Shown here piece by piece: positions 43,700-44,545 of a stretch of DNA of 64,000 bases. A program made the translations under genes and the position numbers. The notes beneath the pieces were generated by a model. It was given only the letters and a program-made list of their open reading frames with translations. It ran no database searches and was not told the DNA's origin. Origin of the DNA: Octopus bimaculoides (lineage: Eukaryota); NCBI RefSeq assembly GCF_001194135.2, contig NC_068999.1, forward strand, positions 36,276,559 to 36,340,558, written 5' to 3'. Position 1 is the first letter of the stretch. Each line of letters opens with the position of its first letter.

Positions 43700-44545
43700 A
43701 AAATCTACCTATGCTAACTAGGGATCCAAACATGAGAAACTTTCTGAAAACATATAAATTCATCAAATGCAAAAAGCAACACAAATCGCTGAAAACACTT
43801 CTGACAAATTCTAAGCTTTACACAAAAAGCACGAAACCAATGGTTAAAAAATGTGGACGCCCAAACCGTGGAAGATGCCCCAACCTGCTGGAAGGCTAGA
43901 AATTCCTATTCAAACAAGGAGAGAGGATCACAATTAAAGCCAACTTCACTTGTGCTTCCGGGAATCTAATTTGTTATAAATTGTTCAGATTGTGGACATA
44001 ACTATATAGGACAGTCAAGCAAGGCACTTAGACGGAGAACCACACTACATAAGGAACAGATCCATTTCCTACATTACAGACAGATTCTTTTCAGGGGACA
44101 CATAGAGAGATTTGCAGGTAATACCCAACCAAACTTCACATTATTTCGTATCTACCAGTGCAAAGAAACAATTTATGTGCGAGAACGTTTAAATAATTGA
44201 AAAATTATTTATCCAAAATACAGAAAATCCCTGAATATGAACGCGTAACTAACTGCAGACTCAATATGCATTTTAATTCGTGTTCATATACCCATCACTG
44301 TAAATATTTTATGTCACTACTTTAGCTTTTGAAGTTTTGTATATTCATTTTAAACCTGCAAAAAATTAGCAATTACCTCCCTTGTCACGAATAATAACGA
44401 TCACCATTTATCTTCCCATTGATTTTCTGCTTCTTGATTCATTCACAAACTTCCATTCACGACATGGAATAACATCTTCTTAAGAAAATACGAAATTATA
44501 ATAATTTCAATGTCATGATTAGCGAAAGCGAAACCGCTCGACAAA
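43700..44545 (+). mobile_element. Penelope-like element, 5'-truncated: GIY-YIG domain and 3' region
   Basis: Translation KKCGRPNRGRCPNL..IKANFTCASGNLI..CSDCGHNYIGQSS..LRRR.TLHKEQI is a GIY-YIG endonuclease of PLE type; follows a (TG)n tract; hammerhead-like motif at its 3' end. Confidence 0.88.
44511..44543 (+). ncRNA. Minimal hammerhead-like motif with A3:U8 core variant
   Basis: TGTC ATGATTA GC GAAA GC GAA ACCGCT C GACA: 4-bp helix I, 2-bp helix II with GAAA loop, GAAA core, near-palindromic ACCG(C)T helix III, UC site; core is AUGAUUA rather than CUGANGA. Confidence 0.6.

What the first reader, a model, noticed from the sequence alone, without database searches (positions are those of the whole stretch)
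44511..44543. Minimal hammerhead with an apparently compensated A3:U8 tertiary pair
Seen: helix I, helix II (GC-GAAA-GC), GAAA core, ACCG(C)U helix III and UC site are all correctly placed about 280 bp after the PLE ORF end on the same strand. The CUGANGA box reads AUGAUUA. Established: C3 and G8 form a Watson-Crick tertiary pair in the active hammerhead, and compensatory swaps can preserve activity. Inferred: both changes are complementary, so this may be a natural core variant missed by standard CUGANGA searches rather than decay.
Basis: partly seen in the sequence, partly recalled or inferred. Interest (0 to 1): 0.8.

Follow-up and report, generated by a model that had tools for sequence, protein, structure and literature searches.

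The report
Penelope retrotransposon hammerhead with A3:U8 core
This is the worn-out copy of a small self-cleaving RNA (a hammerhead ribozyme) at the tail of a dead Penelope-like jumping gene; its two unusual core bases are an inherited, mutually compensating variant shared with related elements, not random decay.

Summary
The motif is exactly as described at 44511-44543 (+): UGUC-AUGAUUA-GC GAAA GC-GAAA-CCGC-UC-GACA. It starts 262 nt after the stop codon of a decayed, 5'-truncated Penelope-like element (PLE) ORF.

On sequence alone the motif is only marginal: about 0.16 are expected by chance per window, and a covariance model built from relatives only gives E = 0.17, though it ranks first in the window. 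Position and homology make it convincing. Twelve related PLE loci carry a minimal type I hammerhead on the ORF strand, 79-237 nt after the stop.

In a scan that left positions 3 and 8 free, all 13 hammerheads have a Watson-Crick 3:8 pair: A:U in 6, C:G in 5, U:A in 2. In the endonuclease-domain tree the window falls in a clade that is A3:U8 in five of six members.

This copy is still a relic. Its helix III reads ACCGCU, one base off the ACCGGU palindrome of its clade. It has no partner copy in the window, and it is not predicted to fold or dimerise as a hammerhead.

Natural U3:A8 covariation is already published, also for PLE hammerheads. I found no report of a natural A3:U8. I rate it an incremental new variant of a known kind.

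The parts
43630..43700 (.). (TG)n microsatellite at the 5' truncation point of the PLE fragment.
   Evidence: Sequence read. Protein homology to PLE relatives begins at 43699.
43699..44248 (+). Decayed 3' part of a Penelope-like element ORF. It covers the Cys-rich linker (KKCGRPNRGRC) and the C-terminal GIY-YIG endonuclease domain. There are in-frame stops at 43897-43899 and about 44200, a frameshift at about 43970, and the terminal TAA at 44246-44248.
   Evidence: tblastn of P0020, P0004 and P0009 gives two HSPs in different frames with '*' inside. Conceptual translation. Best relative: P0020, 54% identity. No RT-domain remnant anywhere in the window.
44249..44510 (+). 3' UTR / pseudo-LTR spacer between the ORF stop and the ribozyme (262 nt).
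   Evidence: The equivalent spacers in 12 relatives are 79-237 nt.
44511..44514 (+). Hammerhead helix I, 5' strand (UGUC).
   Evidence: It pairs with 44540-44543.
44515..44521 (+). Core box AUGAUUA = A3 U4 G5 A6 U7 U8 A9. A3 is at 44515 and U8 at 44520; they form the compensated tertiary pair.
   Evidence: The same box occurs in L003 and L006, and AUGAAUA in L007, L018 and L016. Pair 3:8 counts are AU 6, CG 5, UA 2, with 0 unpaired.
44522..44529 (+). Helix II hairpin GC-GAAA-GC (G10.1-C11.1, C10.2-G11.2, GNRA loop).
   Evidence: Eight-nucleotide helix II segments also occur in L005 and L019.
44530..44533 (+). Core G12 A13 A14 A15.1 (GAAA).
   Evidence: These columns are invariant in all 13 sequences.
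44534..44537 (+). Loop 3 / dimerisation element CCGC. The C at 44537 breaks the ACCGGU palindrome found in all five clade relatives.
   Evidence: Cofold: the actual sequence does not give a hammerhead dimer, but the same sequence with G at this position does.
44538..44539 (+). U16.1 and C17. The predicted self-cleavage site lies between 44539 and 44540.
   Evidence: Position inferred from the hammerhead consensus.
44540..44543 (+). Hammerhead helix I, 3' strand (GACA).
44555..44562 (+). CUUUCGCU, complementary to AGCGAAAG (44521-44528). It forms an 8-bp hairpin that competes with the hammerhead fold in this copy.
   Evidence: Fold of 44490-44575: the MFE and the centroid both contain this helix. 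It is also visible.
44686..44820 (.). (TA)n/(TG)n/(CA)n microsatellites followed by an assembly gap (44821-44965). This is the probable region of the element's 3' boundary.
   Evidence: Relatives end against (TA)n 50-100 nt after their hammerhead.

Best explanation
Window 44511-44543 (+) is the remnant of the minimal type I hammerhead ribozyme that Penelope-like retrotransposons carry in their pseudo-LTR, just downstream of the RT-endonuclease ORF.

Shown here:
- The motif lies 262 nt after the stop of a decayed, 5'-truncated PLE ORF, on the same strand.
- Related PLEs carry a homologous motif at the same place.
- In that set, positions 3 and 8 covary among C:G, U:A and A:U without exception.
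- The window's nearest protein clade is predominantly A3:U8.

Inferred:
- The A3:U8 pair was inherited from an active ancestor.
- In that ancestor it replaced the C3:G8 tertiary Watson-Crick pair that forms only in the catalytically active conformation. The pair would keep the 2'-OH of nucleotide 8 (general acid) and G12 (general base) in place.
- Like other metazoan PLE hammerheads, the ancestral ribozyme had essentially no helix III. It would cleave only when two copies, from tandem pLTRs or two transcripts, pair through the palindrome A15.1-CCGG-U16.1. This forms a 6-bp intermolecular helix III, possibly assisted by the element's own protein.
- Cleavage after C17 would trim PLE transcripts.

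The copy in this window is most likely inactive. The palindrome is broken (ACCGCU), no partner copy is nearby, the ORF is dead, and stronger alternative hairpins are predicted.
For: - Anatomy: every invariant core base except positions 3 and 8 is canonical.
- PLE ORF remnant: 43699-44248, with two in-frame stops and one frameshift.
- Relatives: 12 related loci (L002, L003, L005, L006, L007, L010, L011, L014, L016, L018, L019, L020) have a minimal hammerhead on the ORF strand 79-237 nt after the stop. All have a perfectly palindromic A15.1-NNNN-U16.1. They were found with a descriptor that left positions 3, 7 and 8 free.
- 3:8 states: AU 6, CG 5, UA 2, none unpaired. The slid and shuffled controls are far lower.
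- Endonuclease-domain NJ tree: the window groups with L002, L003, L006, L007 and L018 (5 A:U and 1 U:A including the window), sister to L019 (C:G). L011 (C:G) and L014 (U:A) are sisters. L016 (A:U) is distant. This implies at least four double switches.
- Covariance models built without the window rank 44512-44542 first in the window: 18.6 bits, E = 0.17 and 14.7 bits.
- Predicted homodimers of L003, L006, L002 and L016 are domain-swapped hammerhead dimers with an intermolecular ACCGGU/AGCGCU helix III.
- Literature: PLE hammerheads lie in pLTRs, lack helix III, have palindromic 15.2-16.2/loop 3 and probably act as dimers, and U3-A8 covariation occurs in Schistosoma Cercyon PLEs (PMC4209133). 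Natural U3-A8 is reported and covarying pairs are active in vitro (PMC3088659). C3G/G8C partially rescues a PLE hammerhead that is protein-assisted (PMC11167929). G12 is the general base and the G8 2'-OH the general acid (PMC6155905).
Against: - No copy of the same family (nucleotide-level relatives) was available, so the family consensus itself was not seen. The relatives are only 26-54% identical in protein.
- On sequence and structure alone the motif is marginal: E = 0.17-0.8, and chance expectation 0.16 per window.
- It scores below held-out true members, 14.7 versus 19.9-25.9 bits.
- Helix II is only 2 bp, and there is no unpaired base between positions 9 and 10.1, unlike the published PLE consensus.
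- The monomer and dimer MFE structures of the actual sequence are not hammerheads.
- No cleavage data exist for any A3:U8 PLE hammerhead. PLE hammerheads are weak in vitro and dispensable for in-vitro insertion (PMC4209133, PMC11167929).
- Rfam gives no hammerhead hit.
Confidence: 0.8

Rival explanations
1. Decayed canonical hammerhead: the family's ribozyme has CUGAUGA, and this dead copy happened to acquire C3->A and G8->U after insertion.
For: The copy is clearly degenerate. It has two in-frame stops and a frameshift in about 550 nt of ORF, and one further change in the helix III palindrome. No same-family copy was available to show the consensus directly.
Against: - It needs two specific substitutions that happen to be complementary, while the other core bases stayed intact.
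- The result is identical to the box of L003 and L006 (AUGAUUA), and shares the A3:U8 state with L007, L018 and L016.
- The window's nearest protein clade is A:U or U:A throughout, never C:G.
Confidence: 0.07
2. Chance look-alike: an AT-rich 64-kb window contains a hammerhead-like string by accident, unrelated to the PLE.
For: Motifs of this quality are expected 0.16 times per window. The covariance-model E-values are only 0.17-0.8. Rfam is silent. The fold z-score is about 0.
Against: - It is the top-scoring site of the whole window in two models built without it.
- It lies on the ORF strand in roughly the 79-300 nt range after the stop of the only PLE ORF remnant, where 12 of 14 relatives with enough flank have theirs. 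The joint expectation is about 3e-4.
- It shares the box and GAAACCG-U with L003 and L006.
Confidence: 0.04
3. The element is real and conserved but is not a self-cleaving ribozyme in the A3:U8 lineages. Instead the motif is kept as a dimerisation or protein-binding (RT/EN recognition) structure, or it is a passenger that parasitises PLEs.
For: - PLE minimal hammerheads cleave poorly in vitro (PMC4209133).
- Hammerhead mutants do not affect in-vitro insertion of a Poseidon PLE, and no reads ending at the cleavage site were found (PMC11167929).
- Naiad PLEs thrive without canonical hammerheads (PMC8557442).
- No A3:U8 PLE hammerhead has been assayed.
Against: - The C3:G8 pair exists only in the active hammerhead conformation. 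Strict Watson-Crick covariation at 3:8 (13 of 13, at least four switches) together with invariant U4 G5 A6, A9, G12 A13 A14 and H17 is what selection for catalysis predicts. Selection for a mere hairpin or dimer would not predict it.
- Covarying 3:8 pairs are reported active in vitro (PMC3088659).
Confidence: 0.09

Closest known systems
Minimal type I hammerhead ribozymes of Penelope-like elements (min-HHRs; Cervera & de la Pena 2014, PMC4209133)
   Same: - Location in the pLTR / 3' region of a PLE, on the ORF strand.
- Type I topology.
- No real helix III, only A15.1-U16.1 around a short (near-)palindromic loop, which implies a dimeric active form.
- Short helix I and a G10.1-C11.1 pair.
- Core covariation at 3:8 is already documented in this group: U3-A8 in about 1,300 Schistosoma Cercyon motifs.
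   Different: - The pair here is A3:U8 (purine at 3, pyrimidine at 8), not U3:A8.
- Helix II is 2 bp with a GAAA loop instead of the 6-8 bp typical of the published consensus.
- There is no unpaired base between positions 9 and 10.1.
- The palindrome is broken in this copy.
Natural U3:A8 hammerhead core variants (Perreault et al. 2011, PMC3088659)
   Same: Compensatory replacement of the C3:G8 tertiary Watson-Crick pair, with the rest of the core intact.
   Different: Those are pyrimidine3:purine8 variants, mostly in bacterial and phage contexts with full helix III. This one is purine3:pyrimidine8 in a metazoan-type retrotransposon ribozyme.
Engineered C3/G8 swaps (C3G/G8C rescue; Martick & Scott 2006, tested in the Poseidon PAc PLE hammerhead, PMC11167929)
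   Same: The same principle: single changes at position 3 or 8 abolish cleavage and the complementary double change restores it, at least partly.
   Different: Those are laboratory mutants. Here the swap is a natural, clade-wide state.
Dimeric hammerheads of newt satellite 2, Schistosoma Sm-alpha and cave-cricket pDo500 repeats
   Same: Type I hammerheads with an unstable helix III and a palindromic loop 3 that require two copies to form the active structure.
   Different: Those have the canonical CUGANGA core and loop-loop tertiary contacts, and they sit in short tandem repeats or non-autonomous elements. This one sits behind a PLE ORF, has no visible tertiary loops, and is a solitary copy.

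Membership tests
Hammerhead ribozyme (catalytic core) | Invariant core bases U4 G5 A6, A9, G12 A13 A14, the A15.1-U16.1 pair, and H17 (not G) at the cleavage site. | tested here: met
   44516-44518 UGA, 44521 A, 44530-44532 GAA, 44533 A / 44538 U, 44539 C.
Hammerhead ribozyme (catalytic core) | C at position 3 and G at position 8 (CUGANGA box). | tested here: not met
   A3 (44515) and U8 (44520). The underlying requirement, a Watson-Crick 3:8 pair, is met. It covaries in relatives: AU 6, CG 5, UA 2, 0 unpaired.
Hammerhead ribozyme (catalytic core) | A three-way junction with helices I, II and III. | tested here: inconclusive
   Helix I is 4 bp and helix II 2 bp plus a GAAA loop. Helix III is only A15.1-U16.1 around CCGC. 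The predicted MFE of the real sequence is not the hammerhead fold.
Hammerhead ribozyme (catalytic core) | A match to the Rfam hammerhead covariance models (RF00163 and others). | tested here: not met
   No hammerhead hit at gathering score or at E <= 10. The canonical-core minimal hammerheads of the relatives are missed as well, so this test has little power for minimal PLE forms.
Hammerhead ribozyme (catalytic core) | Site-specific self-cleavage. | not testable with these tools
   Needs in vitro transcription and cleavage assays.
PLE-associated minimal hammerhead (Cervera & de la Pena 2014) | Lies in the pLTR or 3' region of a Penelope-like element, on the ORF strand. | tested here: met
   262 nt after the stop of the PLE ORF remnant. 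Twelve relatives have theirs 79-237 nt after the stop.
PLE-associated minimal hammerhead (Cervera & de la Pena 2014) | Palindromic 15.2-16.2 / loop 3 that allows a dimeric helix III. | tested here: not met
   The window has ACCGCU, which gives two C-C mismatches in a homodimer. All 12 relatives are perfectly palindromic. The cofold of the real sequence is not a hammerhead dimer.
PLE-associated minimal hammerhead (Cervera & de la Pena 2014) | A G10.1-C11.1 pair. | tested here: met
   44522 G / 44529 C.
PLE-associated minimal hammerhead (Cervera & de la Pena 2014) | A long helix II (6-8 bp) with an unpaired base between positions 9 and 10.1. | tested here: not met
   Helix II is 2 bp with no bulge. 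Relatives have 2-5 bp with variable bulges, so this PLE clade departs from the published consensus.
PLE-associated minimal hammerhead (Cervera & de la Pena 2014) | A second copy in tandem or nearby to form the dimer. | tested here: not met
   No second copy of the element or motif in the window (blastn; covariance-model search). Assembly gaps could hide one.
Penelope-like element, C-terminal GIY-YIG EN+ type | A GIY-YIG endonuclease domain homologous to PLE endonucleases, preceded by a Cys-rich linker. | tested here: met
   tblastn/blastp give 45-54% identity to P0020, P0004 and others. Relatives carry PF01541, with PF26215 and RVT_1 upstream. The linker is KKCGRPNRGRC.
Penelope-like element, C-terminal GIY-YIG EN+ type | A reverse-transcriptase domain upstream in the same ORF. 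| tested here: not met
   Only 43699-44242 matches PLE proteins. The copy is 5'-truncated at a (TG)n run.
Penelope-like element, C-terminal GIY-YIG EN+ type | An intact ORF (an active copy). | tested here: not met
   Two in-frame stops and one frameshift, plus loss of conserved Cys and Thr-Gly residues.

The most novel reading that the evidence does not exclude
A clade of C-terminal-endonuclease Penelope-like elements carries minimal hammerheads whose tertiary 3:8 pair moves freely among C:G, U:A and A:U. This would include the first natural purine3:pyrimidine8 (A3:U8) hammerheads, which are the majority state in the window's sub-clade and are catalytically competent as dimers. If so, CUGANGA-based descriptors systematically under-count PLE hammerheads, and some PLE lineages scored as 'lacking canonical hammerheads' should be searched again with an NUGANNA box constrained to complementary bases at positions 3 and 8.
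Probability: 0.4. Interest if true: 0.6.

Novelty: new variant of a known kind. Interest (0 to 1): 0.45.

Why it matters
The C3:G8 pair is the hallmark of the active hammerhead conformation. Natural covariation at this pair is direct evolutionary evidence that PLE hammerheads are selected for catalysis, which is still debated because they cleave poorly in vitro and are dispensable for in-vitro insertion.

An A3:U8 state that dominates a PLE sub-clade would extend the known natural repertoire (C:G, U:A) to a purine3:pyrimidine8 pair. It would also give a natural test of how the surrounding context tolerates such pairs. And it would show that descriptor searches fixed on CUGANGA miss a sizeable share of retrotransposon ribozymes.

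For genome annotation, the immediate result is more modest: a dead, 5'-truncated PLE fragment with its ribozyme relic.

Tried and rejected
- Rfam at gathering score on the whole window, and at E <= 10 around the site, gave no hammerhead. Rfam on 12 related loci also missed all the minimal hammerheads. It found only a separate canonical hammerhead at L018:1-34. Rfam is therefore uninformative for this architecture.
- blastn of 43690-44640 against the window found no second copy.
- The first protein search, with the conceptual (frameshift-corrected) window protein, returned a single hit. Searches with P0001 and P0020 gave 94 relatives in all, none closer than 54% identity. The family consensus proper therefore could not be obtained.
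- The search for related loci gave nothing in viral contigs. It gave one contaminant contig in a bacterial MAG in genome contigs (L016) and seven loci in metagenome contigs.
- L017 (385-nt flank) and L012 (decayed ORF) showed no hammerhead with my descriptor or with model R1. L001, L004, L008, L009 and L013 have flanks too short to judge, and L015, with a weak match and a short flank, showed none either.
- MAFFT on the hammerheads with flanks misaligned the core (A2). I replaced it with a spliced fixed-length alignment (A3) for pair counting and a flank-free alignment (A4) for the covariance model.
- Helix II could not be put in one register across the relatives, so it was left unpaired in the models.
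- Literature searches for A3-U8, U3-A8 and C3A/G8U found no report of a natural A3:U8.
- Two papers that might settle prior art or activity could not be read: Lunse, Weinberg & Breaker 2017 (RNA Biol) and Przybilski & Hammann 2007 (RNA). From memory only, the latter reports that any Watson-Crick 3:8 pair keeps cleavage competence, with a context-dependent preference for pyrimidine3:purine8. Treat that as a lead.
- I did not run pattern scans of large collections for AUGAWUA...GAAACCGGU, because thousands of chance hits would be expected.

Full report
**1. What is in the sequence**

Window 44511-44543 (+) reads TGTC ATGATTA GC GAAA GC GAAA CCGC TC GACA. In hammerhead numbering this gives:

- Helix I: UGUC/GACA, 4 bp.
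- Core box: A3 U4 G5 A6 U7 U8 A9.
- Helix II: G10.1-C11.1 and C10.2-G11.2, closed by a GAAA loop.
- G12 A13 A14 A15.1, a four-base loop CCGC, then U16.1 and C17.
- Predicted cleavage between 44539 and 44540.

Every invariant core base is canonical except positions 3 and 8, and those two are complementary.

**2. The context is a dead Penelope-like element**

- Proteins of the PLE C-terminal region (Cys-rich linker plus GIY-YIG endonuclease) align to 43699-44242 on the + strand. The alignment runs in two frames, with in-frame stops at 43897-43899 and about 44200 and a frameshift near 43970.
- The terminal stop is TAA at 44246-44248, so the motif begins 262 nt after it.
- Homology starts at a (TG)n run (43630-43700), and nothing else in the window matches PLE proteins. 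The copy is therefore 5'-truncated.
- Several conserved residues are lost.
- Downstream, (TA)n/(TG)n microsatellites start near 44686 and run into an assembly gap.
- There is no second copy of the element or motif in the window.

**3. Is it more than chance?**

On motif quality alone, only marginally.

- A descriptor matched at the candidate's level requires helix I >= 4 bp, helix II >= 2 bp, a Watson-Crick 3:8 pair and at most one palindrome mismatch. It is expected 0.16 times per window on both strands in first-order Markov simulations.
- A covariance model built only from related hammerheads (R1, window excluded) ranks 44512-44542 first in the window. It scores 18.6 bits, E = 0.17, and the next hit scores 12.5 bits.
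- A second model (R2) gives 14.7 bits, again first. Three held-out true members score 19.9-25.9 bits under that model.
- Rfam reports no hammerhead even at E <= 10.

The significance comes from the conjunction with position. The best hammerhead-like site of 128,000 strand positions falls in the stretch of about 220 nt behind the only PLE ORF, on its strand. The joint expectation is roughly 3e-4.

**4. Relatives**

No same-family copy could be obtained; the closest protein is 54% identical. Through protein hits I fetched 20 loci from marine and other metagenome and read-archive assemblies.

I scanned them with a descriptor that fixes only U4 G5 A6, A9, GAAA and U16.1 H17, and leaves positions 3, 7 and 8 free. 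Twelve loci have a minimal type I hammerhead on the ORF strand 79-237 nt after the stop, each with a perfectly palindromic A15.1-NNNN-U16.1. No such motif occurs on the other strand or elsewhere in these loci.

| 3:8 state | Box | Loci |
|---|---|---|
| A3:U8 | AUGAUUA | L003, L006 (same box as the window) |
| A3:U8 | AUGAAUA | L007, L018, L016 |
| U3:A8 | UUGAAAA | L002, L014 |
| C3:G8 | CUGAAGA | L005, L010, L011, L020 |
| C3:G8 | CUGAUGA | L019 |

- With the window included, the pair count is AU 6, CG 5, UA 2, and none unpaired. Helix I and the palindrome also covary, but those pairs were selected by the descriptor.
- An NJ tree of the endonuclease domains places the window with L002, L003, L006, L007 and L018. 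That clade is five A:U and one U:A, and it is sister to the C:G element L019.
- L011 (C:G) and L014 (U:A) are sisters at 60% protein identity. L016 (A:U) is remote.
- At least four double substitutions are therefore needed, and no mismatched intermediate was seen.

This is the pattern expected if the 3:8 tertiary pair is under selection. It makes inheritance of A3:U8 by the window copy far more likely than two post-insertion hits.

**5. How it most likely works**

Established for the hammerhead:

- G12 acts as general base and the 2'-OH of nucleotide 8 as general acid (PMC6155905; PMC3884650).
- Because the acid is a ribose hydroxyl, a different but isosteric Watson-Crick pair can hold it in place.
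- Covarying pairs are reported active in vitro (PMC3088659).
- C3G/G8C partly rescues a PLE hammerhead (PMC11167929).

Established for PLEs: their hammerheads sit in pLTRs, lack a real helix III, have palindromic 15.2-16.2/loop 3, and are thought to act as dimers. Activity in vitro is low (PMC4209133; PMC6765202).

Computed here:

- Homodimers of L003, L006, L002 and L016 are predicted to form the domain-swapped hammerhead dimer, with an intermolecular six-base-pair helix III.
- Monomers of L003, L007, L002 and L005 fold with helices I and II as drawn.

Inferred: the ancestor of the window copy cleaved after C17 as a dimer, trimming PLE transcripts.

**6. State of this copy**

It is probably inactive.

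- C44537 turns ACCGGU into ACCGCU, which gives two C-C mismatches in a homodimer.
- The monomer MFE is a different hairpin.
- In context, AGCGAAAG (44521-44528) pairs with CUUUCGCU (44555-44562).
- The predicted homodimer uses the self-complementary GUCAUGAU instead of helix III.
- With G in place of C44537 the predicted dimer is the hammerhead dimer.
- Helix II is only 2 bp. That is shorter than in its clade relatives but comparable to L005 and L019.

**7. Comparison with what is known, and novelty**

Natural 3:8 covariation is already known. U3-A8 occurs in several hammerheads (Perreault et al. 2011, PMC3088659) and in about 1,300 minimal hammerheads of Schistosoma Cercyon PLEs (Cervera & de la Pena 2014, PMC4209133). 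Compensation at 3:8 in PLE hammerheads is therefore not new.

What I did not find reported is the A3:U8 (purine3:pyrimidine8) state (text searches). Two papers that might contain it, or activity data for it, could not be read.

I file the feature as a PLE-associated minimal hammerhead relic with a new core variant of a known kind. It fails two membership features of the published PLE consensus, the palindrome and the long helix II. Its relatives meet the first of these.

**8. Verdict**

- Observation: confirmed.
- Interpretation (natural compensated variant rather than decay): supported by comparative evidence, but not yet by a family consensus or by any cleavage assay.
- The individual locus is an ordinary dead transposon fragment.
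- The interest lies in the clade-level A3:U8/U3:A8/C3:G8 covariation.
- Interest 0.45; confidence in the main explanation 0.8.

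Noticed in passing
L002-L020, the stretch between the ORF stop and the hammerhead (e.g. L007:1108-1258, L010:1201-1436); window 44249-44510: In 10 of the 12 related PLE loci the spacer between the ORF stop and the hammerhead is packed with CRE / PAR-bZIP-like half sites (TGACGT, ACGTAA). Examples are GTGACGTTACGTTAC, present twice with a degenerate third copy in L007, and ATGACGTCA twice in L010. The density is 15 per kb against 0.75 per kb elsewhere in the same loci. These may be pLTR promoter elements. The window copy has none intact, only TGTCACGAA and TTCACGACA.
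   Followed up: partly
L018:1-34 (+): A second hammerhead with a canonical core and different helices (A CUGAUGA GUC...GAC GAAA CGCGCG UU). It scores 21.6 bits against Rfam Hammerhead_1, below the gathering score of 34. It lies about 100 nt upstream of the 5'-truncated PLE ORF whose own 3' hammerhead is A3:U8. This probably reflects nested or tandem insertion next to another PLE family.
   Followed up: partly
L005:~3745, L010:~1575, L014:~800, L020:~2345; window 43630-43700 and 44686-44820: The related elements end 50-100 nt after their hammerhead against (TA)n microsatellites. The window fragment is bracketed by (TG)n and (TA)n/(TG)n runs. This fits the microsatellite insertion bias described for PLEs (PMC8557442).
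   Followed up: no
L011:~2290-2325 and L014:~815-850: These two loci come from different assemblies, and their hammerheads differ in core state (C3:G8 versus U3:A8). Downstream of the hammerhead they share an identical stretch of about 36 nt (ACAACTCGTCTAAACATCAACCCAACAATGTTAGAT). In L014 a tRNA-like sequence follows. This may be a common 3' terminus or a shared target repeat.
   Followed up: no
window, whole: The scaffold is heavily gapped and microsatellite-rich: 19 N runs totalling 7,391 N, and 35% G+C. Nearly all long 'ORFs' are microsatellite or gap artefacts.
   Followed up: no
window 58815-59005 (+): Just after an assembly gap, the end of an ORF reads like two C2H2 zinc fingers (ECGVCQRVCKSNGGLKRHVRIH ... 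CNLCGCFFKTLSGLKSHIRRH).
   Followed up: no
L016 (JABSON010000276.1, labelled as a Campylobacteraceae MAG): This 3.4-kb contig of a bacterial metagenome-assembled genome encodes a PLE-type GIY-YIG domain followed by an A3:U8 minimal hammerhead with a 7-bp helix I. It is almost certainly a eukaryotic contaminant contig binned into the MAG.
   Followed up: partly
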